From the NCBI RefSeq assembly GCF_902459465.1, contig NC_047076.1, positions 13,764,001 to 13,828,000 on the forward strand: a DNA stretch of 64,000 nucleotides, in the 5' to 3' direction. Below, in pieces: positions 1 to 47,000 of this stretch. Numbering within the stretch: position 1 is the first letter of the stretch; each line of letters opens with the position of its first letter. Source of the stretch: Asterias rubens. Its lineage: Eukaryota. The notes below the pieces were generated by a model. That model was not told the DNA's origin, made no database searches, and was given only the letters and a program-made list of their open reading frames with translations. A program made the position numbers and the translations under genes.

Positions 1-1516
1 CTCACGAATACCCGAACATCTACTCTGCGGTAGTAGAACAAAGCAAGACAGTTCTCTAAGAACAAACTCTACCTGGCAAGTGGTGTTACCGCAAACCAAA
101 TATATATACATATAGGACGTTTAAAAAGAACTTCGACATATAGCCATACCTAAGTTATTTGTACACAATCCTCAATATCGTCACTGCTTAGCAAGGTTTA
201 GGTGCTAAGCACATAAACTACAAGTTGAGGTTGGGCGATATACAGGTGTAGAATTTAAGGATCGTATGTATTCACTGATTGGAGGATATTGAAATCCAAA
301 TTCATTTCATTTGTTTTGTCAAATGTTTACTGTATTCGGAAAGATATTGTATGATACCATGGGTCAAAGTTACACAGGTTTTAGTATCTTATCTGACAAG
401 AAAAAAATAATTTTCCTTGTGAGTTCTCAAAGGAAAACCATTATTAATTGTGTTTCGAAACCCAAACATAATTTAAAATTTGTTCTTGCTGACCTCTCGA
501 GAGCTCTTCTTCTGTGTTGTATAATAAGTTTAAGTTTTGTTATTGTTGTACAATACAGTACGATACAATACAATGCAATTATTATTATTATTAATGCATC
601 CATTATTTGCAAAATATTGCGTGTAGTTATTTAAATGCCTCGTAGTTTTAATAGCAACTGTACGAAATTAAATTGCAATTGAATAAGGTTGAATCTGTGT
701 TTCATGTTTTCTCTTTCATTATTGTTGTGCAAAGCCTTTAACGTAAAATCAAACTTCAAAACTGTGCACCCTCAATATTGGAAAACATCACAAGGGGTAG
801 TAAGTCCAGGATTTTTATCCATTACGGGCCCGAAATTAAACAAAATCACATTAAAAACAAAACAAAAGAGGTCGTGATTCCAGCATTTTCATCAAAAAAA
901 GACCTAAGTGTAAATTTTAAGGAACAAACATTTTTCATCATCAGAAGCCAAGCATTTTAGTCGTTTTTTAAAATGATTTCAGTGATGAAAATGCTGGACT
1001 TACCCCTTGCCTTTCTTCAATTTTAGGAGATTTTTTGATGAGAATGCAGCTGGACGTCTTTTTTTTCAGTTTATAAAAAGAAAGATAATTTGAATACACA
1101 TAATTGTCCAGAAGAAAAAACTTCCGAGGTCAAATAAATAAAACAAAAACTACGTCTTTAATGGTGTGGTTAGTTGGGTTCATTTAATTAATTGTACTAA
1201 ATCTCATAGCTTGATAGGTGGCGCCGTAGCTACACTAACTACGTATGGGACTGGGAGCCACGAGACCCTGGTTCAACTCTACTGGGTGTATGTTTCTTTT
1301 TCTTTGTTGCTTGAGTGGACGCAGTGAATTATTATAAGTAGTATAAACCCCCCCCCCCCCCAGACACACCAACAGCGTGTTCTACCGAGAGCTGGTACAC
1401 CCGGTTCGAATCCTGTACCCGTACATTATATAGACTTGATTTTACTGCTTGTCGCGGGAATGAATTTGGGGTAGGTCATACCCAAACTAGGTTGGATTAT
1501 TTGGCCAGGTGGTAGA

Positions 1517-3520
1517 GTAAAAGACAGTCTCCAAGTTACAGGTTGCTGGAACAATAGGATGGGTCTCGAACACTCATTTTAACCTTGATTTTAAACCGTC
1601 GTACTATCCGAAATGAGGCATTATCTCAAAAAGTAGCAATCGTAGACGACTAAAACCAAGATTTTCCTGCTCCTCGCCCTCTAATACACCTAGGTATGAA
1701 ATTTCAGGCGATTTGGAAGACAAAAATTTTGGCCGATTTCTGAAAAAAACGACAAGGGGGTAAGCTTGACGTTTTTTCAGCCTCGGAAACATTTTCTCTC
1801 CGAATTGCCTCAAAATTTAACCAAAGGAAGTTCGTCATATGTAAAAGACAGTTTCCAAGTTACAGAAAGCTGGAACAATAGGATGGGTCTCAAATATTCA
1901 TTTTAATCTGGATTTTAAACCGTCGTACTATCCGAAATGAGGCATTATCTCAAAAAGTAGCAATCGTAGACGACTAAAACCAAGATTTTCTTGCTCCTCG
2001 CCCCCAATTACACCTAAGTATGAAATTTCAGTCGATTTGGAAGACACAAATTTCGGCCGATTTTTGAAAAAACGACAAGGGGGTACTGACGTTTTTTCAG
2101 CCTCGAAAACGTTTTCTCTCCGAATTGCCTCAAAATTTAACCAAAGGAAGTTCGTCATGTGTAAAAGACAGTCTCCAAGTTACAGGTTGCTGGAACAATA
2201 GAATGGGTCTCAAACACTCATTTTAATCTGGATTTTAAACCGTCGTACTATCCGAAATGAGGCATTATCTCAAAAAGTAGCCATCGTAGACGACTAAAAC
2301 CAAGATTTTCCTGCTCCTCGCCCTCTAATACACCTAGGTATGAAATTTCAGGCGATTTGGAAGACAAAAATTTCGGCCGATTTTTGAAAAAACGACAAGG
2401 GGGTAAGCTTGACGTTTTTTCAGCCTCGGAAACATTTTCTCTCCGAATTGCCTCAAAATTTAACCAAAGGAAGTTCGTCATGTGTAAAAGACAGTCTCCA
2501 AGTTACAGAAAGCTGGAACAATAGGATGGGTCTCAAATATTCATTTTAATCTGGATTTTAAACCGTCGTACAATCCGAAATGAGGCACTATCTCAAAAAG
2601 TAGCAATCGTAGACGACTAAAACCAAGATTTTCTTGCTCCTCGCCCCCAATTACATCTAAGTATGAAATTTCAGTCGATTTGGAAGACAAAAATTTCGGC
2701 CGATTTTTGAAAAAACGACAAGGGGGTAAGCTTGACGTTTTTTAAGCCTCGAAAACGTTTTCTCTCCGAATTGCCTCAAAATTTAACCAAAGGAAGTTCG
2801 TCATGTGTAAAAGACAGTCTCCAAGTTACAGGTTGCTGGAACAATAGAATGGGTCTCAAACACTCATTTTAACCTTGATTTTAAACCGTCGTACTATCCG
2901 AAATGAGGCATTATCTCAAAAAGTAGCAATCGTAGACGACTAAAACCAAGATTTTCCTGCTCCTCGCCCTCTAATACACCTAGGTATGAAATTTCAGGCG
3001 ATTTGGAAGACACAAATTTCGGCCGATTTTTGAAAAAACGACAAGGGGGTAAGCTTGACGTTTTTTCAGCCTCGGAAACGTTTTCTCTCCGAATTGCCTC
3101 AAAATTTAACCAAAGGAAATTCGTCATGTGTAAAATACAGTCTCCAAGTTACAGGCTGCTGGAACAATAGAATGGGTCTCAAACACTCATTTTAACCTTG
3201 ATTTTAAACCGTCGTACTATCCGAAATGAGGCATTATCTCAAAAAGTAGCAATCGTAGACGACTAAAACCAAGATTTTCTTGCTCCTCGCCCTTAATTAC
3301 ACCTAAGTATGAAATTTCAGTCGATTTGGAAGACAAAAATTTCGGCCGATTTTTGAAAAAACGACAAGGGGGTAAGCTTGACGTTTTTTTCAGCCTCGGA
3401 AACATTTTTTTCTCCGAATTGCCTCAAAATTTAACCAAAGGAAGTTCGTCATGTGTAAAAGACAGTCTACAAGTTACAGGTTGCTGGAACAATAGGATGG
3501 GTCTCAAATATTTATTTTAA
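1517..3520. repeat. Tandem satellite, about 6.2 copies of a ~323-bp monomer
   Basis: The unit start gtaaaagacagtctccaagttacag recurs at about 1517, 1841, 2161, 2484, 2807, 3130 and 3455. The repeated minus-strand ORFs ending LLFEIMPHFG are by-products of this repeat. Confidence 0.95.
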
Positions 3521-4045
3521 CCTCTCTTTTTGGAGTCACTGCTATATCAACAAGTAAGCGACATTGCGACAAGAACACGAATAGTCGGGTACCCTATAGT
3601 TGGTCTTATAACCCATGCTTCGTACCCAGTAATTTACCGCGTACACATGTATTCAAAATGATCTCCAACCATGCAGTTGACTCTGGCTGTCTCCGTGGAC
3701 GATATTTAGAGCCTTTTTGATGTAGTTTTAATCTTCAGGGAACTGTTCAGGCAAGACTAATGTGTACTCGTTTATTCTGATTCAATATGAAGTCGTTCAA
3801 ACCCATGGTAAAAGCAATGTTTGTGATTTTGTTTGTTTCTATTAGCTATAGGTCTACACTACGTTAGCTGGTATGCTGGTATGCTGTGCACAACACAATG
3901 GGTATGGTGTGTTATTGCTCAATATAATTCTCTGTTATAGTTAGTAGGCCTGTAGGTTGCTGTTTTCCCGTTGATTATTCGGAGATTAAAACAAAACGGC
4001 CAGAAATTGGTGGTGAGGTCGTAAAATTGTTCCAATCTAATTATT

Positions 4046-4177
4046 GGATAACTTTCCGTATGGCGCCACCACTTTTTCACTCATTTTTACAAAAAGGGAT
4101 ATCTCATTGAGGTAAATAAGATACTATATTATTTTATATCGAATGAAAAAGTGGTGGCGCCATACGGAAACTTTTCC
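4046..4177. mobile_element. Short MITE with ~30-bp terminal inverted repeats
   Basis: ttccgtatggcgccaccactttttca ... tgaaaaagtggtggcgccatacggaa. A near-identical copy with different flanks lies at 15896-16027. Confidence 0.85.
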
Positions 4178-4819
4178 ATACGATATGGACAGGTTTGCGG
4201 TAACACCATGCAATGACTATCATCTCTAAATATGGGGTGGTTCTGAAAATAACCGTTGGTTTCAATTGACGTTTCGGTCAGTATTCTCTGATCGCCTTTG
4301 GAGAAAAACAAAATTCTTTTACGATGCACAAACACTTGACGTTTAAATTTTAAGTTTAATGATTTAAATTATTTAAATAAATAAAAATAAATAAAAAATT
4401 GCTGCTTAAAATAAATTTGAATGTGTATGTCAATTATTGTCTGAATTCTTTTTATATTGATTTAAAGAGCAGTCATGTGAAATGTAGAAACTCAAACATT
4501 AAACAATATTGAATTAAAACATAAAGAATACTCCGTCCCGTGTCTTATTTAGAGTTCAATTTCCTTAGACTATCAAATATTACATTATATTATATTATAT
4601 TACATATAATAATAAATGGTTTTGTTGGTCACATTGTTACGCCCCCTGTTTGAATATGCCCCCCCCCCCCCATTCGCCCGATTTGCCCGGCTTCTAGAGA
4701 CTTTTTCAATTGCTGATATTATTTTCTCAGTTAGATAGACCCGTTTTAGTCCCGTGCATTTTATTTATCTCAAACACCGTCGAATTTGTGCATGCATCAA
4801 CTCTGTTGTACCCAGTCCC

Positions 4820-6720
4820 AATCTTTACATTACCTGGGGTACTATGGCATCGGGAAATCCTTGTAAAACACGCGAGTGGAAGGCACTCGCTATATACGTT
4901 TTGATTAAAAGTTGTCCACTCTAAGGTTTATAATTAAACTCGAACTCATTGTTCATAAGAAGAGCGGTTGCCCAGTGGTAGAGCTCCGGATTCTGAGCGC
5001 AAAGATACTGAGTTCGAGCCACGGCGCGTGTCTTTTTCTACGCGTAAGAACATTGGTTTAAGCGGAACCCTATGGCATAGGGAAACCCTTGCTTTATACC
5101 TAATAAATAACATGCGAGTGGAAGGCACCCGCTATTACGTTTTGATTTAAAGTTGAGTTCATTCTAAGGTTTATATTTAAACTCGAACCTTTTGTTATGA
5201 AGAAGGACAGTGGCACAGTGGTAGGGCTCTGGACTCTGAAGCCAAAGGTGCTGGGTTCGAACCCCGGTGTGTGTTCTTTTTCTGCGTTGAAGAACATTGG
5301 TTTACGCGGTACCCTACGGCCTAGGGAAATCCTTGCTTAACCCTTAATCAATAATTAATGCGAGTGGAAGGCATAAGCTATAATACGTTTTGATTTAAAA
5401 TTGTTCATTCTAGGGTATAACATTAAACTCGAACACAAATGATGTAAGAGTAGTAGTGGCCCAATGGAAGGGCTCCCGATTCTACACCCAATGGTACGGG
5501 GTTCGATTCCCGATCTGTGTTCTTTTACTACGTTTTGATTTAAAGTTGTTCATTCTAGGGTATAACATTACACTCGAACGCAAATGAAGTAAGAGTAGTA
5601 GTGGCCTAATGGAAGGGCTCCGGGCTCTACAACCGATGGTACGGGGTTCCATTCCCGATCTGTGTTCTTTTAGTATGCTTGAGAACATTGGTTTGCGCGG
5701 TACCCTATGGCATAGGGAAATCCTTGCTTTACACTTAATAAATAAATTGCTAGTGGAAGGCATAAGCTATAATACGTTTTGATTTAAAATTGTTCATTCT
5801 AGGGTATAACATTAAACTCGAACGCAAATGAAGTAAGATGAGTAGTGGCCCAATGGAAGGGCTCCGGGCTCTACACCCAATGGTACAGGGTTCGATTCCC
5901 GGGTGTTCTTTTACTACGTTTTGATTTAAAGTTGTTCACTCTAGGGTTCAACATTAAACTCGAACGCAAATGAAGTTAGAGTAGTAGTGGCCTAATGGAA
6001 GGGCTCCGGGCTCTACACCCGATGGTACGGGGTTCGATTCCCGATCTGTGTTCTTTTAGTATGCTTGAGAACATTGGTTTGCGCGGTACCCTATGGCATA
6101 GGGAAATCCTTGCTTTACACTTAATAAATAATTTGCGAGTGGAAGGCATAAGCTATAATACGTTTTGATTTAAAGTTGTTCATTCTAAGGTATAACATTA
6201 AACTCGAACGCAAATGAAGTAAGATGAGTAGTGGCCCAATGGAAGGGCTCCGGGCTCTACACCCAATGGTACGGGGTTCGATTCCCGTGTGTTCTTTTAC
6301 TACGTTTTGATTTAAAGTTGTTCATTCTAGGGTATAACATTAAACTCGAACGCAAATGAAGTAAGAGTAGTAGTGGCCTAATGGAAGGGCTCCGGGCTCT
6401 ACACCCAATGGTACGGAGTTCGATTCCCGGGTGTTCTTTTACTACGTTTTAATTTAAAGTTGTTCATACCAAGGTTTAAAATTAAACTCGAACGCCATAA
6501 AAGTAAGAGGAGACGTGGCTCAATGGAAGGGCTCCGGACTCTACACCCAATGGTGCGGAGTTCGATTCCCGAGTGTTCTTTTACTACGTTTTAATTAAAA
6601 GTTTGTCATACGAAGGTTTAAAATAAAACTCGAACGCATATTAGTAAGAAGGAGCAGTGGCCCAGTGGAAGGGCTCTGGTCTCTGGACCGGAGGGTCCCG
6701 GGATCGAATCCAGCTTCAGA
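4820..6720 (+). repeat. Tandem array of ten tRNA-like (tRNA-Gln-related) pseudogene units with AT-rich spacers
   Basis: Heads start at about 4961, 5204, 5450, 5595, 5839, 5981, 6225, 6367, 6509 and 6651. Each has an A box (tggcccaatgg-type) and a B box (ggttcgattcc-type), and nine are followed directly by TTTT. The anticodon arm ctggactCTGaagcca (unit 2) resembles tRNA-Gln(CTG). Acceptor stems do not pair. Confidence 0.8.
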
Positions 6721-6829
6721 AAAGTTGGAGACGTTTTAAAAATGTTTTATTTTTAATTTTTTTTTTAACTTATATAAAAAAGAGCATAGGTTCGTTTTAA
6801 GTTTTAAGTTTAAAGTTTCTTTCCTCAGC

Positions 6830-6985
6830 GAGTGCTAGCGGTGAGTGCCACTGCGCGGTGTGTGCCACTGTCTGGTGGGTCGAGACTTCTCGGACGGCAA
6901 CCGCGCTGCCACCACCGGGGTTCGAACCGGGGACCCTTTGCTTGGGAGGCCGACACCTACCCACGACACCCACTTGGGTCCCCCC
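6830..6985 (-). mobile_element. tRNA(Gly-CCC)-like head with a GC-rich body, probable SINE, convergent on the tRNA-like array
   Basis: Minus strand reads ggcctCCCaagcaaagggtccccggttcgaaccccgg, with a clear B box. The A box and acceptor stem are degenerate. Confidence 0.5.
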
Positions 6986-7039
6986 CAGGATAATTCGCAT
7001 TTTAGACCTGATAAACCTTCGGTTCATACTTTACACAGA

Positions 7040-7760
7040 GAGCTATGGCATGGGATTTCAGTGCTTTATACTTAGTATATAATTGAATACTCATCATAGG
7101 ATACTATGGTATGGGAATATCAATGCTTTATACTTGGTGTATAATTTGCGAGTTGAATACTTTTCATAGGATACTATGGTATGGGAATATCAATGCTTTA
7201 TACTTAATTTCGAGTGAAATGCACAAGTTGTGGGCTGGTTACATAGGCATGGGAAACTTATTGGTTCGGACTTAAAACATATTTGAGTTAAAATCTACAC
7301 ACTGTATAGTTTAAAATGGGAAAAGGGGTACGCATGGTACTATGGCATAGGGAAATCCTTGCTTTGGACTTGGTAAATAATTTGCGAGTGGAAGGCATAA
7401 TACGCTTTTACTGACGGGTATTGGTAGTAGATATGGGACTCTTGTGTTCAGACTTAAAAAGTATTCGACGAGTTGAAGGCACACGCTGTAGGCATAAAGA
7501 TAGACAATTAGTTTAATTAATGGGGAAATGGTACGCATGGTACAATGGCATAGGGAAATCCTTGCTTTGGACTAGGTAAATAATTTGAGAGTGGAAGGCA
7601 TACGCTTTACTGACGGGTAGACAGGGGACTCTTTGGTTGTGATTTAAAAAATTGGTGAGTGGATGGAAGGTACACGCTGTAAGTATGGCGCATTGGTTTA
7701 CAAGGAAACATAGGCATAATAGGGGACTTACAAAATAATTATTTGAGTCGAAGGCACACG
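7040..7760 (+). repeat. Degenerate tandem copies of the array spacer module without tRNA-like heads
   Basis: ctatggcatagggaaatccttgc and gcgagtggaaggca motifs recur at about 7044, 7103, 7173, 7243, 7339 and 7542. Confidence 0.7.
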
Positions 7761-8029
7761 ATGTAGGTATAGAAAATTAGTTCACAGGGGAAGTTGGTCT
7801 GGCATTTCGATGGGAATTGGGGATTGTCGGTCGCTGTGGAAAGGGTAGCGGGGTACACTGGGGTTGGGTGGCTGAGTCTTTAGTAGGCTAGCTGGGATCA
7901 ACATGACGGCGGGAATATAACTTCTTTGAATTTCCACCAGTGTTCTTGGTGGGTACTCGCCGTGATGGTACAATTGGTTTTATTGAGTTTGATACAATAA
8001 TTATTTGAGACATTGTTATATCGAAAATC

Positions 8030-8400
8030 AGGCAATAAAAACAATTACATCAAAAAGTTACTAAGGTAGACGACTAAACCCAAGTTTTCAGGCGATTTTG
8101 AAAAACACAACTTTTTTCGGCAGATTTTTGAGAAAACGGCATGGGGTATAACTTGACGTTTTTTTCACCCTCAAAAAAAATGTTACTCAGATTTGCCTCA
8201 AAATTTAACCAAAGAAAGTTCTTTATGTGCAAAAGACGCTCTACGGATACAGATTGCTGGAACAATTGGAAGGGCCTCAAATTAATATTAATTTTAATCT
8301 TGATTTGGGGGCATCGAAAACTAGACAATATCTCAAAAAGGTGGCAAACCAGTTTTAGATTTACAACTTGATATGAGAAAGGCAATCTGCAAAGGCTTAA
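8030..8400. repeat. Diverged solitary monomer of the 323-bp satellite
   Basis: Shares gtagacgactaaa, acttgacgttttttt, ttgcctcaaaatttaaccaaag and gctggaacaat with the 1517-3520 array, in the same orientation. Confidence 0.8.
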
Positions 8401-10118
8401 ACATGATGTATCAATTCTTTTGGATGGTAGGCCTACGACTCCGAATGTCAGACCACCGGTCATTTTGGTTGGTAAACAGTTTACGGCAGCTCAGTGTTAC
8501 ATAACATGTAAACAAAAACTGACATAGAAACACGTAGGAGTGGCCGACACGAATTGAAGTAGATAATCTATAGAAACTACACAGAAAAGTCGATTGTTTC
8601 ATCAGATCATGAAGGAATTCTTCATCCAGTATCTGATTGACGGCAAATTGGCAATGACAATGCAATGACCTATGCTCTAACGTTACAGCTACTTCCGGAT
8701 TGCCGTTGTTTATGTTGAGCATGAAGGTGGAATAAAGTTGCGACAAGAATTGCCCGTTTTATGACAAACTAGGTGGTTACACGCCTTCCACGAGGACTTC
8801 ATCCTATTCTACATTATGAACTTGAATAAACTACATGATAAAGCTTACCCATAGAGACATTAAATCACATCAAATCATCCTAAGTATATCCATGGTGTTG
8901 ATAAAATAAAGCATGGCTGGTGGCCATTTTGAATATGGCGTCACGGTATCAAGCCGTCGAGTACCCAGACCTCTACTACTCTGTTGGTGTTCATTTCGCG
9001 TAGCGTGGAAATCGGGTACCTGTCGGTTGCTTTAGCTGGTTCCAATCACCGGTGCCTGTCCAAGATCAAAGGGGCAAACTGGCTCCCGCAAGATCTCGCG
9101 GAATGATTCGAAATGCGAGAATCGAAGGCTTGAATCATATTAAAAGTGATGAATAAACGCTTACACTGTAACTAATTGTGGTAATTAAACCAAGTAGCCT
9201 TACATTTGTTTAACTTGAAATGATTTAGCGCAAAGTTGAAAGAACTAAAGGTAATATATGAGGTCTATTTTTTGTTCGTTTCTCAGCTTATTATTAATGT
9301 AGGAACAAATAACTTGTAGGTAGATTATTAAAAAGTGACCTTATTTCGTTGTTGAAAATATCTCACTCAAATTTGCGCCACCAAATAATCTAACTTTTAA
9401 AGCCTTCGGTACACTTCAACCCCCCCCCAAAAAAAAAAAAAAAATAATAATAATAATAATAATATTAATAACAAAATATGGCCATCTTATGCATGTTGTT
9501 GTGTTAGAAAATTGCAAGGATTTTACTAAAACGCAAGGCTTACCATTTGAATTTTTGTAACAAAAAATGCAAGGCTTTGAATATCCATTTTTTGTAGGGT
9601 AAACCGTTTTTGTTTACTGAAAAAGTTTAAAGAGATGAGCCTTGTGCCTCAAAATAAATACATCAATAAAAAAAAATAAAAAAATACAAACAAAACAAGG
9701 GGTAGATGTCCTACAGTTTATCAAACTTTGGGCCATAAATTTAAGAAAACACAAAGAGTTGTTTTTATTCTCTAAAATAATGCGATAGGTACCTCTGACT
9801 CTGATGTGTGTTTAACTTGAGGAATAACTTTTATAAATAATATTTTCAACTTGAGGAATGGTTTTAGATATAGATTGGTCAACATCAAATCTCAATCTTA
9901 GAAAAAAATGAAAGGTACATGCCATCACTGAAGAAACCAGCTTCATTTTAATGCATACAAATCGAACTTCATAAAATGTGGTCAAATAATACAAATAAAT
10001 AAAATCACAAGGCATAAGTCAAGCATTTTTTATCAATGTTTTGTAATTTTGTTTATTGGAATAGTACAATATAACACATTTGGCTTGATCAGAAATGTAT
10101 AAGGTTAAATCACAATAG

Positions 10119-10488
10119 TTAAAGGCAGTGGACACTATTGGTAATTAGCATAAAACCTTTCTTGGTGACGAGTAATGGGGAGAGGTTGATAGTATAAAAC
10201 ATTGTGAGAAACGACTCCCTCTGAAGTGCCATAGTTTTCGAGAAAGAAGTAATTTTCCCTAAATTTGATTTCGAGACCTCAGATTTAGAACTTGAGGTCT
10301 CGAAATCAACCATCTGAACGCACACAACTTCGTGTGACAAGGGTGTTTTTTTCTTCATTATTATCTCGCAACTTCGATGACCGTTTGAGCTCAAATTTTC
10401 ACAGGTTAGTTATTTTATGCATATGTTGAGATACACCAACTGTGAAGGCTAGTCCTTGACAATTACCAATAGTGTCGTATGCCATTAA
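10119..10488 (-). mobile_element. TTAA-flanked non-autonomous DNA transposon (Kolobok- or piggyBac-type MITE)
   Basis: Terminal repeat ttaaaggcagtggacactattggtaatt. The same family occurs at 10509-10932, 12362-13080, 22956-23340 and as fragments near 14986, 35680 and 47750. Confidence 0.8.
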
Positions 10489-10508
10489 ACCTGCAATTGT
10501 ATGTTGAT

Positions 10509-10932
10509 TTAAAGACACTGGACATGTTTGGTAATTGTCAAAGACCAGTATTCACTCTTGATGTATCTCAAAATATGCATAACATAACAAACCTGTAAAA
10601 ATTTGAGCTCAGTTGGTCGTCAAATTTGCAATTAAAGAACAATGAAAGCAAAAACGCCCTTGTTGCACAAGTTGTGTGCTTTCAGATGCTTGATTTCGAG
10701 ACCTCAAATTCTAATTCTGAGGTCTCGAAATCAAATTCAAATATTTTAGTGAGAAATCGCTTCTGTCTTAAAAACTATGTTACTTCACAGGGAGCTGTTT
10801 CTCATAATGTTTTATACTATCTCCAGCTCTCCAGTTTTATACTATCTCCAGCTCTCCATTGCTCGTTACCAAGTAAGTTTTTAATGATAACAATTGTTTT
10901 GAGTAATTACCAATTGTGTCCAGTGCCTTCAA
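10509..10932 (+). mobile_element. TTAA-flanked MITE, same family, opposite orientation
   Basis: ttaaagacactggacatgtttggtaatt ... aattaccaattgtgtccagtgcc, with the internal gatttcgagacctc...gaggtctcgaaatc palindrome typical of the family. Confidence 0.75.
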
Positions 10933-11489
10933 AGGAATTGTATAATGCTGAACCACGGTTCTATAAGGTTATATCGCAAATTGTATAAATTTATATCGCA
11001 ATTGTATCAGGGAAATATTGCAATAGTTCAAGATTATATCACAATCATATAAGGTTATATCGCAAATGTAAAAGGTTATATCGCAATCGTATAAAGGTAA
11101 TATCGTAACTGTATATACAGTTATATTGCAATTGTATAAGGTTTTATATTCAAGGAATAATGACCCAGGATTCTGTGTTGTTTTTGTCTTGGAATTTTGA
11201 CATTAAATTTGCTTTGACACCGTTGCCCATATTGAAGTTTTAAGTAAAATAGTCTTTTACGTTTTGCATAATTTGTATTGAACATTAGGAAAGCTCTTTA
11301 AAAGAATTTCCAAGTGTGGCCTTTGAATTACTTGGCTCATAAAAATTAATGGATGAGCAGTTAATATGACATGGGTAGTCAGCCCAGTGATCTCCATGAC
11401 CCCTCCTAAAATTCCAGCCCGGACGCCCACGATTATGAATTGTAAATCAAGAACTTGTGGTTCAGTAACTAGACGCTTGTCATTTTTAA

Positions 11490-12215
11490 AATAGCGGTTA
11501 GCTTGGTAGCATTTGAACTCACAACCTTGTCATTGCAAGTCCTGTAGTCTAACCACTGAACCATCACAAAATTGTCATTGTAAAATTAGCAGTTAGCTGG
11601 TAGATTTCGAACCAACAACATTCTGATTGCAAGTCCTGCAGTCTAACCACTGGACCACCATTAGCTTGGTAGGATTCGAACCCACAACCTTGTGATTGTA
11701 AGTCCTGCAGTCTAACCACTTGATCACAGTTTGATTGGTAGGATTCGATCCCACAACCTTGTGATTGTAAGTCCTGCAGTCCAACCACTGGACCACAGTT
11801 AGCTGGGTAGGATTCGAACCCACAACCTTGTGATTGCAAGTCCTGCAGTCTAACCACTGAACCACAGTTAGCTTGGTAGGATTCAAACCAACAACCTTGT
11901 AACTGCAAGTCCTGCAGTCGAACCACTGGACCACAGTTAGCTTGGTAGGATTCGAACCTACAATCCTGTGATTGTAAGTCCTGCAGTCTAACCACTGAAA
12001 CACAGTTAGCTTGGTAGGATTCAAACCTTTAATCTTGTGATTGCAAGTCCTGCAGTCTGACCACTGAACCACAGTTAGCTTGGTAGGATTCAAACCAACA
12101 AACTTGTAACTGCAAGTCCTGCAGTCTAACCACTGGACCACAGTTAGCTTAGTAGGATTTAAACCTACAACCTTGTGATTGCAAATCCTGCAGTCTAACC
12201 ACTGGACCAAGTTGA
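11490..12215 (-). repeat. Tandem array of 69-nt tRNA-derived SINE heads
   Basis: The gtctaaccact anchor occurs at 11641, 11710, 11779, 11848, 11917, 11986, 12055, 12124 and 12193 (period 69). The minus-strand unit has an A box (tggtccagtggttag) and a B box (ggttcgaatcc). Confidence 0.9.
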
Positions 12216-12361
12216 CCACCATCCTGGAATAGTTTCATTACTTCTGTTGATGAGTTGTGGATTGCACTATCATTCATGAGGTCAAAGTGCAAAAAAAGAC
12301 ATCTGGAGATGCTGCATGTTGTTCCGAGCTAAACAAAAAAGGGAGACAAACAAGTAACCTG

Positions 12362-13080
12362 TTAAAGGCAGTGGACACTATTGGTAATTGTCAAAGACTA
12401 GCCTTCACAGTTGGTGAACCTGTGGGGTGTCGTGGCCGAGTGGATAAGAGCACCGAACTCAAGCTCTGATGCTTCTGTTCAGCAGAGTGTGGGTTCGAAT
12501 CCAGGTCGTGACACTTGTGTCCCTGAGCAAGACACTTAACTATAATTGCTTCTCTCTACCCAGGGGTAAATGGGTACCTGTGAGGGCAGAGATGGTTCTT
12601 GTGATTGGTTTAGCCATGTAGCGCATATAATTGTCGCACAGGCTGTATACTCCCCAGGGAGCTGAGATGGTTTAAGGAATGATTTAAGGCCCAGTGACCA
12701 GGGGTAATAATGTCGGAAGCGCTTTGAGACACCCTGTGAAAAAGCGCTATATAAAAACCATATATTATCATTGTTATTAACCTGTGAAAATTTGAACTCA
12801 ATTGGTCATCGAAGTTGCGAGATAATAACAAAAGAAAAAAACACCCTTGTCACATGAAGTTGTGTGCGTTTAGATGGTTGATTTTGAGACCTCAAGTTCT
12901 AAATCTGAGGTCTCGAAATCAAATTCGTGGAAAATTACTTCTTTCTTGAAAACTACATCACTTCAGCGGGAGCCGTTTCTCACAATGTTTTATACTATCA
13001 ACCTCTCCCCATTACTCGTCACCAAGAAGAGTTTTATGCCAATAACTATTTTGAGTAATTACCAAAAGTGTCCACTTTTA
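12362..13080 (+). mobile_element. TTAA MITE interrupted by a tRNA/CORE-like SINE (about 12424-12775)
   Basis: The MITE left end (ttaaaggcagtggacactattgg) is broken after cacagttggtg by ggtgtcgtggccgagtggataagagc...gtgtccctgagcaagacacttaac... The MITE resumes at aacctgtgaaaattt. Confidence 0.8.
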
Positions 13081-13119
13081 TGTGTATGGTGAAAACAAAA
13101 TACTGTGAATATTGTTTAC

Positions 13120-13230
13120 CGTCAAAATAAGTGGTGTCCGTTCTGTCATCTGGGGCTGGGATGAAAGGGGCTTCTGTCTCCCTGATTCGCTTCCAGTCGA
13201 TTGCATGGAATAGTGGATGGGACTTCAGGT
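13120..13230 (-). pseudogene. Isolated exon encoding an AGC-kinase C-terminal tail resembling Greatwall/MASTL
   Basis: ttcttcag|ac ctg aag ... ttt gac g|gtaaac, 111 nt, phase 1-1. It translates as (D)LKSHPLFHAIDWKRIRETEAPFIPAPDDRTDTTYFD, compared with recalled human MASTL [36 protein letters not shown]. I found no other kinase exon in the window. Confidence 0.65.
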
Positions 13231-13944
13231 CTGAAGAAAGCAAGATAATATATTTGAGAAAATTATGGGAAAGCGTCATTAAAGAAAATGGTAAATGTGA
13301 ACATCCTTTTTATCTGAAAGTTACCAACCTAACACACAAGACAAGAACATAAACAAAAACAAAAACAACAACAATAAACTGTCAGTGTCTTCATTCCCAT
13401 TTTAGCATTCGACCGGAAGTCGCATGTCTGGCTTGATCCCCAAAATGTGGATGATAACAAACAACAACAACCACATGAAACCGCGACCAAAATGGTGGTC
13501 TCTTTTAATTTGCGTAGACTACCGACGGAGAGAGCAAAAAAATCCCCATCGGATTGCTTCAGAAAGAAAAAAAACGGACCTAAAACATCCATCAAAAACC
13601 TCCATGTTCCCCCTTCCCAAATGACCTAAAAAACATGCTCAAAACTTACCTTTAAATATTGAAAATGCTTGAAAAATGCGAGTTCTAGTGGTTGTGTTTT
13701 TGTTAACCACCGTCCTAGCTACACGACGTACACACACGCATCACGGCAATAACCAACGGAACTTTCGCAATGCTTTCTGAAAAAACAATAAAATGGAAGT
13801 TTATTTAAAGGTGACGCAATGGGGTGGCACTACTAATAGTAGTACTATTATTGAAATACTATCTAAATCACCAAACTATCTTTTTGAATTGTACAAACAG
13901 AGCCAAAATATTCGTTGATATTTTCACAAACTTACCCGCAAAAA

Positions 13945-15720
13945 CGCCCTTGTTGCACAAGTTGTGTGCTTTCAGATGCTTGATTTCGAGACCTCAAATT
14001 CTAATTCTGAGGTCTCGAAATCAAATTCAAATATTTTAGTGAGAAATCACTTCTGTCTTAAAAACTATGTTACTTCACAGAGAGCTGTTTCTCATAATGT
14101 TTTATACTATCTCCAGCTCTCCAGTTTTATACTATCTCCAGCTCTCCATTGCTCCCTTGTGATTGCAAGTCCTGACGGTTAGCTTGGTAGGATTCGAACC
14201 CACAAACTTGTGATTGCAAGTCCTGACGGTTAGCTTGGTATGATTCGAACCCACAACATTTTGATTGCAAGTCTAGAGTCTAACCACTGAAACACAGTTG
14301 GCTTGGTAGGATTCAAACCCACAACTTTGTGATTGTAAGTCCTGCTGTCTAACCACTGACCACCATTAGCTTGGTAGGATTTGAACCTACAACCTTTTGA
14401 GTGCAAGTCCTGCAGTCTAACCAATGGGCAAATAGTGATTCAGTAACAATAGCGGACAATATTTATTTTAGTCATTATAAAATTGGTGGTTAGCTAGGTA
14501 GGATTCGAACCCACAACCTTGTGATTGCAAGTCCTGCAGTCTAACCACTGAACCACAGTTAGCTTGGTAGGATTCAAACCAACAACCTTGTAACTGCAAG
14601 TCCTGCAGTCGAACCACTGGACCACAGTTAGCTTGGTAGGATTCGAACCTACAATCCTGTGATTGTAAGTCCTGCAGTCTAACCACTGAAACACAGTTAG
14701 CTTGGTAGGATTCAAACCTTTAATCTTGTGATTGCAAGTCCTGCAGTCTAACCACTGAACCACAGTTAGCTTGGTAGTATTCAAACCAACAACCTTGTAA
14801 TTGCAAGTCCTGCAGTCTAACCACTGGACCAAGTTGACCACCATCCTGGAATAGTTTCATTACTTCTGTTGATGAGTTGTGGATTGCACTATCATTCAAG
14901 AGGTCAAAGTGCAAAAGAAGACATCTGGAGATGCTGCATGTTGTTCCGAGCTAAACAAAAAAAGGGAGACGGACAAGTAACCTGTTAAAGGCAGTGGACA
15001 CTATTGGTAATTGTCAAAGACTAGCCTTCACAGTTGGTGAACCTGTGGGGTGTCGTGGCCGAGTGGATAAGAGCACCGAACTCAAGCTCTGATGCTTCTG
15101 TTCAGCAGAGTGTGGGTTCGAATCCAGGTCGTGACACTTGTGTCCCTGAGCAAGACACTTAACTATAATTGCTTCTCTCCACCCAGGGGTAAATGGGTAA
15201 CTGTGAAGGCTAGTCTTTGACAATTACCAATAGTGTCCACTGTTCTTGTGATTGGTTTAGCCATGTAGCGCATATAATTGTCGCACAGGCTGTATACTCC
15301 CCAGGGAGCTGAGATGGTTTAAGGAATGATTTAAGGCCCAGTGACCAGGGGTAATAATGTCGGAAGCGCTTTGAGACACCCCGTGAAAAAGCGCTATATA
15401 AAAACCGTGTATTATCATTATTATTAACCTGTGAAAATTTGAACTCAATTGGTCATCGAAGTTGCGAGATAATAATAAAAGAAAAAAACACCCTTGTCAC
15501 ATGAAGTTGTGTGCGTTTAGACACAGTTAGCTTAGTAGGATTCAAACCTACAACCTTGTGATTGCAAGTCCTGCAGTCTAACCACTGGACCAAGTTGACC
15601 ACCATCCTGGAATAGTTTCATTACTTCTGTTGATGAGTTGTGGATTGCACTATCATTCAAGAGGTCAAAGTGCAAAAGAAGACATCTGGAGATGCTGCAT
15701 GTTGTTCCGAGCTAAGCAAA
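13945..15720 (+). repeat. Local segmental duplication of the 10655-12870 block, with deletions and a third partial copy
   Basis: 13945-14150 matches 10655-10860, 14500-15520 matches 11800-12870 (including diagnostic variants of the 69-nt units), and 15520-15720 repeats 12140-12330. Confidence 0.85.
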
Positions 15721-15895
15721 AAAAGAGTGTTGATTATAAACTTAAAGTTAAAGTAAAACATGGAGAAAGCAAAATGCTACAAAGTACATTCATAATTTCG
15801 ACAACACTCACTCACTATTAAGTTGGTGTCCACTAGTTGACCCAGCTAACTGAGCTAGTAATTGAGCTGAGTAACTGATGCTCTGCACTCATTTT

Positions 15896-16027
15896 GGATA
15901 ACTTTCCATATGGCGCCACCACTTTTTCACTCATTTTTACAAAAAGGGATATATTAATCAGGTAAATTAGATACTATATTATTTTATTTCGAATGAAAAA
16001 GTGGTGGCGCCATACGGAAACTTTTCC
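15896..16027. mobile_element. Second copy of the 132-bp MITE
   Basis: Same termini and core as 4046-4177. Confidence 0.85.
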
Positions 16028-16314
16028 CTGCAGGGGTCTTGGTAGTACAACACAGTACAGTACACTTCACAATCAATCAGATGGAACCGACTTTCACTTC
16101 CATAGTGTTCAGTGTTTGTTGTTGTAATTAAATGAATGATAATGATATGGAAGTCTTATATAGCGCACGTATCTACTAAACAAGGTACTCAAGGCGCTGA
16201 GTATATACATGGAGCAATAGTTTATTGCTCCATGGTATATACAAACTATCAGAAAGATGGTTATTGCAGTGATGAATTCTGAGACCCAATTATTTAGCAG
16301 CCACAACCAGGAAC

Positions 16315-16812
16315 ACCGGTGTGGCAGTTTCAACTTTCCGCTGTGTTCAGTTTTCCGAATGACCAAATACGGTAGCATTACGTCATGCGATGCCTGCGCA
16401 CAGCAAGCGAAAGTAGTCCATTTTTAGTGCCGTATTGAGTCATCCGTTACCCTCTGGTAGCTGTCATGGCGACGTCCACGAGTCGAGTACAACTATGCGG
16501 CAAACGCGTGGATCGTATGAGGTTTTTTTATGCAAGCAGAGTGTGACCTGCCTAAAGTTGTACCCATGAATACATGTAAAGATGGGGCAAGAGATTATGT
16601 GACTACACAGAAAAGAATCGTAATATAAACAATTTGGGGGTCACTGCTGAGAGAACTACAGTACTCGCCAGGGTACTCGCGGCGGTATCTGACAGGTCAC
16701 CCGTAAAACTGAACACGCCGGAAAGCTAAAACCGTTCGAACAACATGTTATGTTCGACTACGTCACCCGGAAAACTGAACACGGCGGATAACTGAATGAA
16801 ACCGCCACACCT
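16315..16812. mobile_element. ~490-bp MITE with long TIRs
   Basis: ccggtgtggcagtttcaactttccgctgtgttcagttttccg ... cggaaaactgaacacggcgg...gaaaccgccacacc. A closely similar copy lies at 22230-22721. Confidence 0.85.
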
Positions 16813-21585: not shown

Positions 21586-22127
21586 CTCAAAGTGACTTTC
21601 AAAACGACAGAAATTCATTCTTAAAGGAATGTTACAGAATTGGTAAGAAAAACACTTGTCTAAGATCACAGATTTACATTAAACTTACACGGTGAGCAGA
21701 AAAGATCCCTTGAAATATTTCTGACTGGCACCCCTGAACAAAGATATTGATATAATAGGGACACTGCCAACATAGGACTGGATAGCTCAGTTGGTAGAGC
21801 TCCGGCACGTTAATCCAGAGGCCGTTGGTTTGAATCTCACTCTAGTCAATAAATTCTTGGTTAAAACCCCAAAATAATTTGAAATATTTCTGTCTGAAAT
21901 GTCATACAAATAAATCGGTGAATGTTTTTTTAATCTCTGTCATGCAAAAGGTGTAATCGGTTTTTCACTATTTTCTTGTGACCGAGATGGCCGATCAATC
22001 TCAAAACCAACTCTGTAATGTTCCTTTAATCATCCATTTTATCTTCTACAAATGTAGTTACAGGTTAGTCTGTGTAAATTTCCCCCCCCCCCCCAACCCC
22101 AAATATATACTACTTAATTATAAACAT

Positions 22128-28859: not shown

Positions 28860-41578
<12,719 letters not shown>

Positions 41579-44061: not shown

Positions 44062-47000
44062 TCAGTCTTCAGCAGATTCAAAGAGGTCTTCTGTACTTTC
44101 TTCAGAATTACTTTGCAGAATTTTCTGCAGTCGTTCCTTGGCTACATCTGCCATCATTCCTCGCACGTCGGGATGCTCGTCTAAGACTGATCAGAATATA
44201 CAGGGGGAAAAAATCAAAAAGATTTACGTAAGTGTCGTGGCCGAGCGGTGTAGAGCACCGAATTTAAACTCTGGCGTTTCTGATCAGCAGAATGTGGATT
44301 CGAATCCCTGGTCGTGACACTTGTGTCCTTAAAGCAAGACACTGAACCATTGCTAACGTAAAGCCGTTAGTTCCATGTGTAAACGCATGTAAAAAAAACC
44401 AGTGCACTTATCGAAAAGAGAAGGGGTTCGCCCCGGTGTTCCTCGCTGGATTGGCATTATTATTGCGCCACAGCACCTTGTAAACCATTACATGGTGCTT
44501 AAAAATTAGGTCTTTTACTCAAAATTCGCCCCACTCCTTGCAGTAATAATATCTGGCGCTTTGTATCCTTTGGCAAAAGGCGCGTTATAAATACGGTTAT
44601 TATTATAAATTAAATGGTTGAAATGATGATCATAAGTCAAACAATATGAATTTAATAGAGAGATAGAAGGACAAGTATGTCATTGCAGAACCCACTGCTA
44701 AAAATTCAAAGTACAGGATTCAGACCTGCCTCTAGCTACTGGGCAATCTCGGTGGTCTAGTTGGTAAGACACTGCTTCAGATTGGCAAGGGTTTGGGTTT
44801 GAATCCCACCCGAGTAATTTACCTGTGATTTTATTCACTGAACTTGAGAAAGTACTGAGTATACAGTGCTACCAGGCATCGGTGTAGGGGTTAAACCAAA
44901 GTTCATATTCTTAAACCTCGATGCAAGTTTAACATCTATTAAATCACTGCGGTAACTGCTGCTAAAATATAGGATTGGAACTGCCTCTGTTAGCTACTGG
45001 GCAATCTCGGTGGTCTAGTTGGTAAGACATCTGCTCTAGATTGATTGTGGGTTAAAATCCCACCCAATTAGTATGCCTGTGATTCTCACAGAACTCGGTG
45101 GAAACTCTAGTATACAGTGCTTACACACATCGGTGTTGGAGTCAAACCAAATAATGGTCTTTATTCCCGATGCATATTGAACAATTTTTTATTTATTTTA
45201 GTTTTATTTATTTTTACTCAACATCCAATAGCGCAAGCGCCACTCACAGGAGGGATAAAAATATTAATATTAAACATTATAAAAACAGTAAAATGTAACA
45301 ATCAATTAAGGAAGTGAACAAAACATAAATATTGAACATCTACTAGATAAGTACCTTGATTAAAGCTCTCTCTGTTGAGGCGGTATATGTCACAGGTAGT
45401 TGTTGTTACAACGGATGCAACGCGGCGTTCATCAATCAACAAAGCAATCTCTGCAATAAATCCACAATTATTCAATTCACATTTATGTCCCTACTGTCAA
45501 CTACACAGCATTACAGAATGATCCATATACAATTTAATAGCAAACAGAGGGGTGTAATGTTTATACAGGGTGCGTTCAATTAGCTTTCCTGTGTCGACCC
45601 CGTGATCAATCGGGTGAGCCCCTGACAAGAGCTAATTGGACGATCACTCACTCTCTCGTGGTGATGTCATGCACCATGGGCCAGCCCAGAGTGACCTCTT
45701 CCACAAGCAAGGCACTTGGAGCTGACCAGGGTGAGCGCTGCATATGTTGTCAAAGCTATTCAAACGTACTGGGTGCAGATCATGGTCGACCCAGGGAAGC
45801 TAATCGAGCGCACCCAAAGTCAATAAAAAGGAAAAGTATGGAGGCAGATTTGATAAACCAAGGATGTAGACAAGAGACAGAGACAGAAAATAAGAGGACG
45901 TACGAAAATGATCAAAACAATAACAACAACACTAAATCAACTAAAATGAAAATATGATGTTGTATATGAAAATAACAAATGATGATAAACCTGGCAAAGC
46001 AGTCAATGGATTATAGTTAACAACACAACAAATCTAAGACCAAATAGAAAAAAAATAAAACATTTCTGCAAACTTCTTATCAAAAATTCTCACCACCAAA
46101 ATGGTCTCCATCCTGAAGTTTGCCAACCACCCGGCCTTCGACTTCAATTTGTACATTTCCATGCTCAATGAAATACATGCTGTTGCCTTTACGACCAGCC
46201 TTTATGATGGTGTCACCCTTCAAGTAGACTTCAAATGTTAGTTTCTCGATGACATCGACGACGTAGTCCGGACTTCCTTTGTTGAGAAATTCTACTTTGC
46301 TGACGAGAGAGCGAAGACTATGTTGTATGATCTCCTTTTTTTGGAGAAAAACAATTTAAATTATGGCAAACCAAGAAAACATGTTAATTTTATGTCCCAG
46401 TCGGATGGGATGTAAAGCCGTTGGTCCCGTGTGTTGTGTATTGCACGAGAAGGGGTTCGCCTCGGTGTTCCTGGTTTGATTGGCAGCATATTGCGCCACA
46501 GCACCTTGTAATCCAATAGGTGCTTTAAAAAGTAGGTCTTATACTTGAAATCGTAGCTCTTCAAACCTTGCAGAAAAACTACTGTGCACTTTGATACGGC
46601 CCTTTAGGGGTGTGTTAAAGCGCTATATACGAACCAAGTATTATTATATCATAAACCTCAAGGGTTGTGGTTTATTATTTGATATCTGAAATAAAAATTT
46701 GCACCCCCTTAAGGTGATCCCCTGGCTGCCGCTTCCAAAGTTGTATCGAAAACTTGGGTGTGATCCCTGGTTACACGGCAGTTAACGGTTGTATGGCTTC
46801 TGACTGGTACCCTGAACAAAGATATTGACTAATAGGGAGACCCTCAACATATGGCTTGTCAGAAACCTCAGTTGGTAGAGCGCCGGTACGCTAACCCAAA
46901 GGTCGTTGGTTCAAGTCCTGCTCCAGTAAATTTTTCTTTGTTCAAACCAATAACTTCTATATCATCTTAATTTTGCAATCAACTGCTATAAATACCATTG

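What the first reader, a model, noticed from the sequence alone, without database searches (positions are those of the whole stretch)
4961..6720. Tandem array of Pol III-type tRNA-like genes in which an amber (CTA) anticodon variant has expanded
Seen in sequence: ten ~72-nt heads with A and B boxes, a paired D-stem in most (gccc/gggc) and, in nine, an immediate TTTT terminator. A TATA-like tataa sits about 30 nt upstream of several. Units 1, 2 and 10 have CTG in the anticodon position, and unit 2 (ctggactCTGaagcca) matches the tRNA-Gln arm. The seven central units (CTA at 5482, 5627, 5871, 6013, 6257, 6399, 6541) read ct/tt-CTA-ca, the amber-suppressor anticodon, one substitution from Gln-CTG. 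Unlike SINEs, the heads stop at a terminator. Unlike tRNAs, the acceptor stems do not pair and base 37 is C. Inference: a Gln-derived unit lost chargeability and was amplified by unequal crossover, homogenizing the centre and leaving diverged edges. It may produce an uncharged tRNA-like small RNA or serve as a TFIIIC-binding or insulator cluster. I know of no description of such an array, but could not search.
Basis: partly seen in the sequence, partly recalled or inferred. Interest (0 to 1): 0.72.

Follow-up and report, generated by a model that had tools for sequence, protein, structure and literature searches.

The report
Decayed tRNA-like repeats inside dispersed repeat
The ten "amber suppressor" units are worn-out tRNA-like copies forming a variable-length tandem repeat inside a large non-coding repeat that occurs about 58 times in this animal genome; it is an ordinary kind of repetitive DNA, not a set of working tRNA genes.

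Summary
Window 4835-6726 holds ten head-to-tail units, each with a tRNA-like head, A and B boxes and (in nine) a T-run. Seven carry CTA at the stated coordinates.

The array is not a local curiosity. It is the internal variable-number tandem repeat of a non-coding composite repeat of at least 12-15 kb:
- About 58 copies exist, and 24 of them form 12 inverted pairs.
- Every copy examined has the same architecture: fixed, diverged edge units (U1, U2, U9, U10) around 4 to 21 or more CTA units.
- About 491 CTA units exist genome-wide, so CTA is one old substitution copied many times.

The heads are not working tRNAs:
- They score 20-26 bits on Rfam tRNA. The family threshold is 29 bits, and the genome's real tRNAs score 55-74.
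- The anticodon stem has 3 base pairs, position 37 is C, and the acceptor stem is poor.
- Among 116 units there are no compensatory changes.
- Heads and promoter boxes vary as much as the spacer and the flanks.

A Gln origin is not supported for the CTA heads, which resemble the one real tRNA-Arg in a small panel more than real tRNA-Gln.

The scan found the same family before, on other DNA (s1-150640), and read it the same way. Interest is low.

The parts
4835..6726 (+). Whole tandem array: ten units of 142 bp (upstream box, head, T-run) or about 244 bp (the same plus a roughly 100-bp spacer module). Order: 244, 246, 145, 244, 142, 244, 142, 142, 142, then the terminal unit.
4961..5035 (+). 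U1 head. Fixed left-edge unit; most decayed, with no B-box match; CTG is not in a pairable arm.
   Evidence: orthologous unit seen in the C6 copies
5204..5277 (+). U2 head. Fixed edge unit with loop CU-CUG-AA (A37); 23.4 bits on Rfam tRNA.
5450..6580 (+). Seven CTA units (U3-U9; heads at 5450-5521, 5595-5666, 5839-5910, 5981-6052, 6225-6296, 6367-6438, 6509-6580). U3-U8 form the variable centre. U9 (head starts GGAGACG) is a fixed penultimate unit present in the other copies.
6651..6720 (+). U10 head. Fixed right-edge unit with the best acceptor stem (6 of 7 pairs), a 6-nt anticodon loop with CTG and no immediate T-run; 20.5 bits.
   Evidence: its junction with the flank is found 58 times
6059..6158 (+). 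Spacer module of the 244-bp units (also about 5042-5135, 5284-5383 and 5673-5772). It is related to the decayed repeats at 7040-7800.
   Evidence: query 620-688 hits the spacer modules of the C6 arrays
4178..4834 (+). Conserved left flank of the array, part of the composite repeat.
   Evidence: 92-96% identity at 38 or more loci
6727..7820 (+). Conserved right flank. It holds an AT-rich stretch, another tRNA-like piece on the minus strand (about 6830-6990; 49 copies, all inside the element) and decayed spacer-module repeats (7040-7800).
1517..3523 (+). 323-bp tandem array (6.2 copies) of the same composite repeat. In the 12 inverted pairs it is the inner side, where orientation flips.
1..15521 (+). 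Extent of the composite non-coding repeat in this solo copy. It is collinear with the copy at C16:13.966-13.986 Mb (minus strand) from before window 1 to 15521. Many copies reach at least 12213.
   Evidence: no Pfam match in 10 ORFs of 75 aa or more
11590..12213 (-). Second tRNA-like tandem array of the same element: 69-bp units head to tail, 9 copies. A sister array lies at 14489-14835.
   Evidence: Rfam tRNA 25-27 bits, below threshold

Best explanation
This is a tandem array of decayed tRNA-like pseudogene units. It is the variable-number internal repeat of a large (at least 12-15 kb), non-coding composite repeat present in about 58 copies, mostly in the terminal few megabases of a handful of chromosomes. 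Twenty-four of the copies sit as 12 head-to-head inverted pairs.

Proposed history, in three steps:
1. Inferred: a unit made of about 70 bp of upstream sequence, a tRNA-like head and a T-run, with or without a 100-bp spacer module, was duplicated in tandem.
2. Shown: one lineage of units acquired CTA at the anticodon place, C at position 37 and a weakened anticodon stem before the composite repeat spread. All copies therefore share the order U1, U2, CTA units, U9, U10.
3. Shown: after the spread, the centre of each array kept expanding and contracting by unequal exchange or slippage. Arrays range from 7 to at least about 66 units and carry local higher-order repeats of 386 or 480 bp, while the edge units stayed fixed.

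The units are not suppressor tRNAs. Their intact-looking A and B boxes and T-runs reflect youth (about 3% divergence among copies), not selection. I infer that they have no function of their own. Occasional Pol III transcription or TFIIIC binding is possible but untested.
For: - Flanks: both flanks recur at 92-98% identity at 40 or more loci, in the same order around an array.
- Census: exhaustive pattern counts give 491 CTA-unit cores and 58 U10/flank junctions. The long arrays on C7 and C103 also end in the same junction.
- Architecture: the six paralogous arrays besides the window's that were read end to end show the same fixed-edge, variable-centre layout; eight further fetched arrays (some only partly in hand) were used for the unit statistics. 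Copy number differs between the arms of one palindrome: 24 vs 8, 14 vs 7 and 10 vs 7 units.
- tRNA score: the heads score 20.5-25.6 bits on Rfam tRNA against a threshold of 29. Real tRNAs of the genome score 55-74. ARAGORN accepts only 1 of the 10.
- Structure: 0 double-compensated changes in 14 stem pairs over 116 units, with frequent pair-breaking variants. CTA is present in 110 of 116 units and C37 in 114 of 116.
- Constraint: variability of the head equals that of the upstream spacer (0.065 vs 0.056; p = 0.74). A and B boxes are not more conserved (p = 0.27). Diversity among paralogous fixed units (0.01-0.03) is no lower than in the flanks (mean 0.03).
- Local amplification: a unit's nearest neighbour is in its own array 0.33 of the time against 0.09 by chance. 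The central super-units are 96.6% alike.
Against: - Transcription and factor binding are therefore open.
- With only about 3% divergence among copies, the tests for constraint have little power to detect weak selection.
The rest are known by coordinates only.
- The class of the carrier repeat (mobile element or segmental duplication) is unresolved.
Confidence: 0.85

Rival explanations
1. The array is a working Pol III cluster. Each unit is transcribed into an uncharged tRNA-like small RNA, or the cluster binds TFIIIC and acts as a chromatin boundary.
For: A-box (10 of 11) and B-box (11 of 11) consensus, T4 terminators 9-12 nt after the B box, and TATA-like motifs at about -34 to -30 in 7 of 10 units. 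Real tRNA genes of this genome also have AT-rich upstream regions and stand in tandem arrays.
Against: The boxes and heads vary as much as the spacer and flanks. There is no covariation. The array is a passenger in about 58 copies of a repeat, and its copy number varies 7 to at least 66, which is not what a dosage-sensitive or positional function predicts. No expression data are available.
Confidence: 0.08
2. The CTA units are functional amber-suppressor tRNA genes.
For: CTA sits at positions 34-36 of a tRNA-like alignment with U33. ARAGORN calls the unit at 5838-5911 'tRNA-Pyl(cta)'.
Against: All units fall below the Rfam threshold. The anticodon stem has 3 bp, position 37 is a pyrimidine, and the T stem is bulged. 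The acceptor stem has at best 5 of 7 pairs including two G-U, and it overlaps the terminator. Pair-breaking variants are common. Real tRNAs in this genome score 55-74 bits.
Confidence: 0.01
3. The array is a multimeric retroposon insertion. It would be a head-to-tail multimer of a tRNA-bearing short element pasted in by reverse transcription, as earlier agents proposed for other families in this genome (s1-178626, s1-180019), and it would spread as such.
For: The unit design (tRNA-like gene inside a short repeat, in multimers) resembles those families. The array starts mid-unit at about 4835.
Against: Every array located carries the same flanks and the same fixed edge units, so the family's present distribution is explained by copying of the carrier, not by independent insertions. 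No target-site duplication is visible at the array ends. A single ancient insertion that founded the array cannot be excluded.
Confidence: 0.05

Closest known systems
SINE- or tRNA-derived satellite DNA (squamate sSats, PMC10702118; plant tandem repeats traced to a tRNA gene ancestor, Benslimane et al. 1986, as cited in PMC4411372)
   Same: The tandem repeat unit contains a tRNA-related Pol III-type segment. Copy number is modest. Arrays lie toward chromosome ends, and higher-order repeats and local homogenisation are present.
   Different: Here each unit keeps a complete head plus T-run and about 70 bp of upstream sequence, so it looks like a tRNA pseudogene cassette rather than a SINE fragment. 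No dispersed SINE parent was found. All arrays sit inside one carrier repeat.
Tandem repeats inside mobile elements that seed satellite arrays (Tetris foldback element of Drosophila virilis, PMC4079207; Galileo, PMC3573991; the tandem-repeat-containing MITE DTC84 of the clam Donax, PMC3879986; sea-urchin TU foldback element, Liebermann 1983, as cited in PMC4079207)
   Same: An internal array of variable copy number is carried by a dispersed element. Inverted arms contain tandem repeats. Some copies have expanded to kb-size satellite-like arrays (C7 about 5.4 kb; C103 at least 9.5 kb).
   Different: No transposase, no defined termini and no target-site duplications were found. The outer ends of the arms differ between copies and even between the two arms of a pair. 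The arms are far longer (7-12 kb), and 34 of 58 copies are solo.
Genuine tandem tRNA gene arrays of this same genome (for example tRNA-Gln arrays on C1)
   Same: Head-to-tail units, AT-rich upstream region, T-run terminators, and occasional anticodon-mutated members.
   Different: In the real arrays nearly all members fold as ARAGORN-accepted cloverleaves with a paired acceptor stem, and their spacing is 350-1150 bp. The heads studied here fail the tRNA model.

Membership tests
Functional tRNA gene (Rfam RF00005) | Covariance-model score at or above the gathering threshold of 29 bits | tested here: not met
   Four units were reported, at 25.6, 23.7, 23.4 and 20.5 bits; the other units gave no separately listed match at E <= 10 (five lower-scoring overlapping clan matches were left out). 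Real tRNAs of the genome score 55-74 bits.
Functional tRNA gene (Rfam RF00005) | 7-bp acceptor stem, 5-bp anticodon stem and a purine at position 37 | tested here: not met
   The acceptor stem has at best 5 of 7 pairs, including 2 G-U. The anticodon stem has 3 standard pairs. Position 37 is C in 114 of 116 units.
Functional tRNA gene (Rfam RF00005) | Stems maintained by compensatory change across copies | tested here: not met
   0 double-compensated changes in 14 pairs over 116 units. Pair-breaking variants occur in 15-31 units each.
tRNA/SINE-derived tandem repeat (satellite-like DNA) | Head-to-tail arrays whose unit contains a tRNA-related segment | tested here: met
   TRF periods of 142, 244 and 386 bp. 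Sub-threshold tRNA matches with A and B boxes.
tRNA/SINE-derived tandem repeat (satellite-like DNA) | Copy-number variation, higher-order repeats and local homogenisation between arrays | tested here: met
   7 to 24 units in the arrays read, and at least 37 and at least 66 units by coordinates on C7 and C103. Higher-order repeats of 386 and 480 bp. Nearest neighbour in the same array 0.33 vs 0.09 by chance.
SINE | Dispersed solitary copies with their own flanks, tail and target-site duplications | tested here: not met
   All listed CTA-unit matches lie in arrays at the loci that also hold the U10/flank junction. Only 100 of the 491 places were listed, so rare solitary copies cannot be excluded.
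Foldback-type DNA transposon (FB, Galileo, Tetris, TU) | Long inverted arms containing internal tandem repeats | tested here: met
   12 inverted pairs, always minus then plus. Arms are 96-98% alike, with the 323-bp array at the centre.
Foldback-type DNA transposon (FB, Galileo, Tetris, TU) | Defined termini with target-site duplications | tested here: inconclusive
   Outer ends fall at window-equivalent positions 9122-15521 and differ between copies and between arms. Too few complete copies could be fetched.
Foldback-type DNA transposon (FB, Galileo, Tetris, TU) | Associated transposase in autonomous copies | tested here: not met
   No ORF of 110 aa or more apart from repeat-run ORFs. No Pfam match in 10 ORFs of 75 aa or more in window 1-16500. 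Other copies were not examined.

The most novel reading that the evidence does not exclude
The carrier may be a giant foldback-type mobile or recombinogenic element. It would be assembled almost wholly from tRNA-like modules: the 142/244-bp array, a minus-strand tRNA-like piece, and two 69-bp tRNA-like arrays. Its still-intact Pol III boxes would be occupied by TFIIIC or Pol III, giving the element a chromatin-boundary or recombination-hotspot role near chromosome ends.
Probability: 0.06. Interest if true: 0.55.

Novelty: new member of a known kind. Interest (0 to 1): 0.2.

Why it matters
Mostly as a caution. In this genome a first look finds about 77,000 tRNA-like candidates, and tidy arrays of "Pol III cassettes" with a stop-codon anticodon can be plain repetitive DNA. 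The locus is a clean example of how a tRNA-like cassette becomes a variable tandem repeat and, in some copies, a kb-size satellite while riding in a larger repeat. The carrier repeat itself has about 58 copies and 12 palindromic pairs and is built of several tRNA-like arrays. It may be worth describing for sea-star repeat annotation and for studies of rearrangement near chromosome ends.

Tried and rejected
Those arrays are known from coordinates only.
A degenerate pattern then found the real Gln genes.
- Minimum-free-energy folding of the heads: no cloverleaf, z-scores from -1.2 to +0.4. A real tRNA-Gln also failed to fold as a cloverleaf (z -0.85), so the test does not discriminate.
- Hammerhead or any other Rfam family in the unit: none at E up to 10.
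- Target-site duplications at the array ends: none seen.
- The right-flank tRNA-like piece as a high-copy SINE: rejected, since it has only 49 copies, all inside the carrier.
- Findings search by sequence: blank.
- Species identity was not tested. "Sea-star-like" comes from earlier agents. The 417.6 Mb size fits my memory of Asterias rubens, no more than that.

Full report
**1.

Reading window 4700-7000 and anchoring on the conserved upstream box gives ten head-to-tail units starting at 4936, 5179, 5425, 5570, 5814, 5956, 6200, 6342, 6484 and 6626.
- Tandem Repeats Finder reports periods of 142, about 244 and 386 bp, with scores of 700-2000.
- A unit is about 70 bp of upstream sequence, a roughly 72-nt tRNA-like head and a T-run (142 bp). 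The 244-bp form adds a spacer module of about 100 bp.
- The alternation 142 + 244 makes the 386-bp super-repeat.
- A-box-like motifs occur in 10 of 10 units and B-box-like motifs in 9 of 10.
- A T4-T5 run lies 9-12 nt after the B box in eight units. U1, which has no B-box match, carries its T5 directly after the head; in U10 the first TTTT comes only 22 nt on.
- TATAA or TATAT lies at about -34 to -30 in 7 of 10 units.
- The array really begins at about 4835, inside a spacer module.

**2. The heads are not tRNAs**

- Rfam's tRNA model reports four units, at 25.6, 23.7, 23.4 and 20.5 bits, against a gathering score of 29.
- Real tRNAs of this genome score 55-74 bits.
- ARAGORN accepts one unit, which it labels tRNA-Pyl only because of the CTA.
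- In the Infernal alignment the CTA units have a 3-bp anticodon stem, loop CU-CUA-CA with C at position 37, and a bulged T stem.
- The acceptor stem has at best 5 of 7 pairs, two of them G-U, and its 3' strand runs into the terminator.
- Minimum-free-energy folding was uninformative. A real tRNA-Gln of this genome also failed to fold as a cloverleaf.

**3. The array is a passenger in a large dispersed repeat**

- A search of the window's own genome (417.6 Mb, 150 contigs) with one 386-bp super-unit gave at least 414 matches. They lie in arrays on C16, C6, C7, C9, C15, C21, C2, C10, C30 and C103.
- Both flanks of the array also recur. The left flank (window 4178-4830) matches at 92-96% identity at 38 or more loci.
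- The right flank (6721-7820) matches at 91-97% at 40 or more loci, in the same order around an array.
- Stitched 20-40-kb regions from five other loci are collinear with the window from before position 1 to as far as 15521. They differ mainly in the length of internal tandem arrays.
- Exhaustive pattern counts give 491 CTA-unit cores (35 nt, up to 3 mismatches) and 58 junctions between U10 and the right flank.
- The long arrays on C7 (about 5.4 kb) and C103 (at least 9.5 kb, limited by the contig) end in the same junction. I found no array outside the carrier.
- Fifty-one of the 58 junctions lie in C6 17.5-22.3 Mb (contig 22.6 Mb), C16 11.5-14.1 Mb (contig 14.5 Mb), C15 0.8-3.4 Mb, C21 0.3-4.1 Mb and C9 0.2-1.4 Mb. 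They therefore sit toward chromosome ends.
- Twenty-four copies form 12 inverted pairs, always minus then plus. The 323-bp array (window 1517-3523) is on the inner side, and the arms are 96-98% alike.
- The copy in this window is solo. Its nearest relatives on C16 are 145 kb and 204 kb away.
- No ORF of 110 aa or more exists apart from ORFs that run through repeats. Ten ORFs of 75 aa or more have no Pfam match.

**4. Every copy has the same architecture**

- The six paralogous arrays besides the window's that I could read end to end share one order: U1, U2 (CTG, A37), a variable run of CTA units, U9 (CTA, head starting GGAGACG) and U10 (CTG in a 6-nt loop). Eight further fetched arrays, some only partly in hand, were used for the unit statistics.
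- Total unit counts range from 7 to 24. The two arms of a single palindrome differ: 24 vs 8, 14 vs 7 and 10 vs 7.
- CTA is therefore one substitution that predates the spread of the carrier. It was copied about 490 times and was not selected at this locus.
- After the spread the centres kept turning over. The C6 plus-strand array is built of an alternating 238 + 242-bp pair with locus-specific variants.
- A unit's nearest neighbour lies in its own array 0.33 of the time, against 0.09 expected by chance.
- In the window, the two central 386-bp super-units are 96.6% alike. The edge units are 73-79% alike to their neighbours.
It is a property of the whole family, though, not of this locus.

**5. 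There is no sign of constraint**

- Among paralogous copies, nucleotide diversity in the fixed heads (U1, U2, U10) is 0.01-0.03, the same as in the non-tRNA flanks, whose mean is about 0.03.
- Among 116 CTA units from 14 arrays, the mean non-consensus frequency is 0.065 in the head and 0.056 in the upstream spacer (Mann-Whitney p = 0.74).
- The A and B boxes are not more conserved than the rest (p = 0.27).
- Over the 14 stem pairs there is no double-compensated change. Pair-breaking variants are common: G31 to A in 31 units, G52 to A in 29, G29 to C in 17 and G50 to A in 15.
- The family is young, at about 3% divergence, so these tests cannot exclude weak selection.

**6. The parent tRNA is uncertain**

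- The genome's real tRNA-Gln(CTG/TTG) genes were found with a degenerate pattern and read with ARAGORN.
- They stand in true tandem arrays on C1, are accepted by ARAGORN as cloverleaves, and have AT-rich upstream regions and T-runs.
- I aligned the heads to a small panel of seven tRNAs or tRNA-like sequences. The CTA heads are closest to a real tRNA-Arg(TCG), at z 6.6-8.5, with which they share a 13-nt D-arm stretch.
- They are not close to tRNA-Gln (z 1.2-3.4).
- U2 is about equally close to one Gln(TTG) gene (z 9.1) and to Arg (z 6.8).
"Gln-derived" is therefore not established.

**7. What could not be done**

- The class of the carrier is open. Its inverted pairs with internally repetitive arms resemble foldback-type elements, namely Tetris (PMC4079207), Galileo (PMC3573991) and the sea-urchin TU element as cited in PMC4079207.
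- However, the outer ends of the arms differ between copies and even between the arms of one pair, and no transposase was seen.
- Independent retroposition of the array, as earlier agents proposed for other tRNA-bearing families of this genome, does not fit. Every array shares the same flanks and the same edge units.

**8. Comparison with what is known, and verdict**

- Tandem repeats derived from tRNA-related sequences are known. Examples are the squamate SINE-derived satellites, which are also subtelomeric and of modest copy number (PMC10702118), and the plant repeats attributed to a tRNA gene ancestor (Benslimane 1986, as cited in PMC4411372).
- Tandem repeats carried inside mobile elements that seed satellite arrays are also known (PMC4079207, PMC3879986).
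- The same family was already met by this scan on other DNA of this genome (s1-150640) and read in the same way.
- My work agrees and adds four things: the genome-wide census, the fixed-edge architecture, the tests for constraint and the doubt about the Gln origin.
- This is a new member of a known kind and of low interest. The carrier repeat is the more interesting object.

Noticed in passing
window 11590-12213 and 14489-14835 (minus strand): Two further tandem arrays of the same carrier repeat. They are made of 69-bp tRNA-like units joined head to tail with no spacer (9 and 5 copies). They score 25-27 bits on Rfam tRNA, below threshold. The repeat-run ORFs of 116-209 aa there are artefacts of the periodicity.
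   Followed up: partly
window 6830-6990 (minus strand): A tRNA-like, SINE-looking piece in the conserved right flank. An exhaustive 35-nt pattern count finds only 49 copies, all inside the carrier repeat, so it is not a high-copy SINE.
   Followed up: yes
window 4046-4177: A 132-bp hairpin-like insertion with inverted ends of about 24 nt, looking like a MITE. It is present in this copy of the left flank but absent from most paralogous copies. The first-look candidate count of 2564 hints that it belongs to a high-copy family.
   Followed up: no
window 1517-3523: A 323-bp tandem array (6.2 copies, 93% matches). It forms the centre of the 12 inverted pairs of the carrier repeat. The junction phases in the C21 and C6 palindromes are the same pair (about 253-259 and 314-316 within the unit) on swapped strands, which suggests one palindrome was copied as a whole.
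   Followed up: partly
L030:2565-2636 and L032 (minus strand, about 2335-2406); C1 tRNA-Gln arrays: Inside genuine tandem arrays of tRNA-Gln genes there are Gln-bodied members with anticodon TTA (ochre-like, with a damaged anticodon stem) and CAG. Anticodon-mutated array members are thus not confined to the decayed family.
   Followed up: no
window 21776-21848, 31772-31844, 44746-44817 (plus) and 34738-34809 (minus): Four further Rfam tRNA matches above threshold (31-44 bits), with mismatched stems in at least the two whose alignments were shown. They are probably more tRNA-derived repeats or pseudogenes. The genome yields about 77,000 tRNA-like first-look candidates.
   Followed up: no
window 37670-37714: A match to the histone 3' UTR stem-loop family (39 bits, threshold 34) that lies inside a 124-aa ORF. 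Nearby ORFs look like exons of an NDUFS1-like gene, so the match may be spurious.
   Followed up: no
G000:C2:1563704-1566850: Matches to the 244-bp unit recur every 1450 bp on C2. This suggests a larger higher-order repeat that includes the unit. Letters could not be fetched.
   Followed up: no
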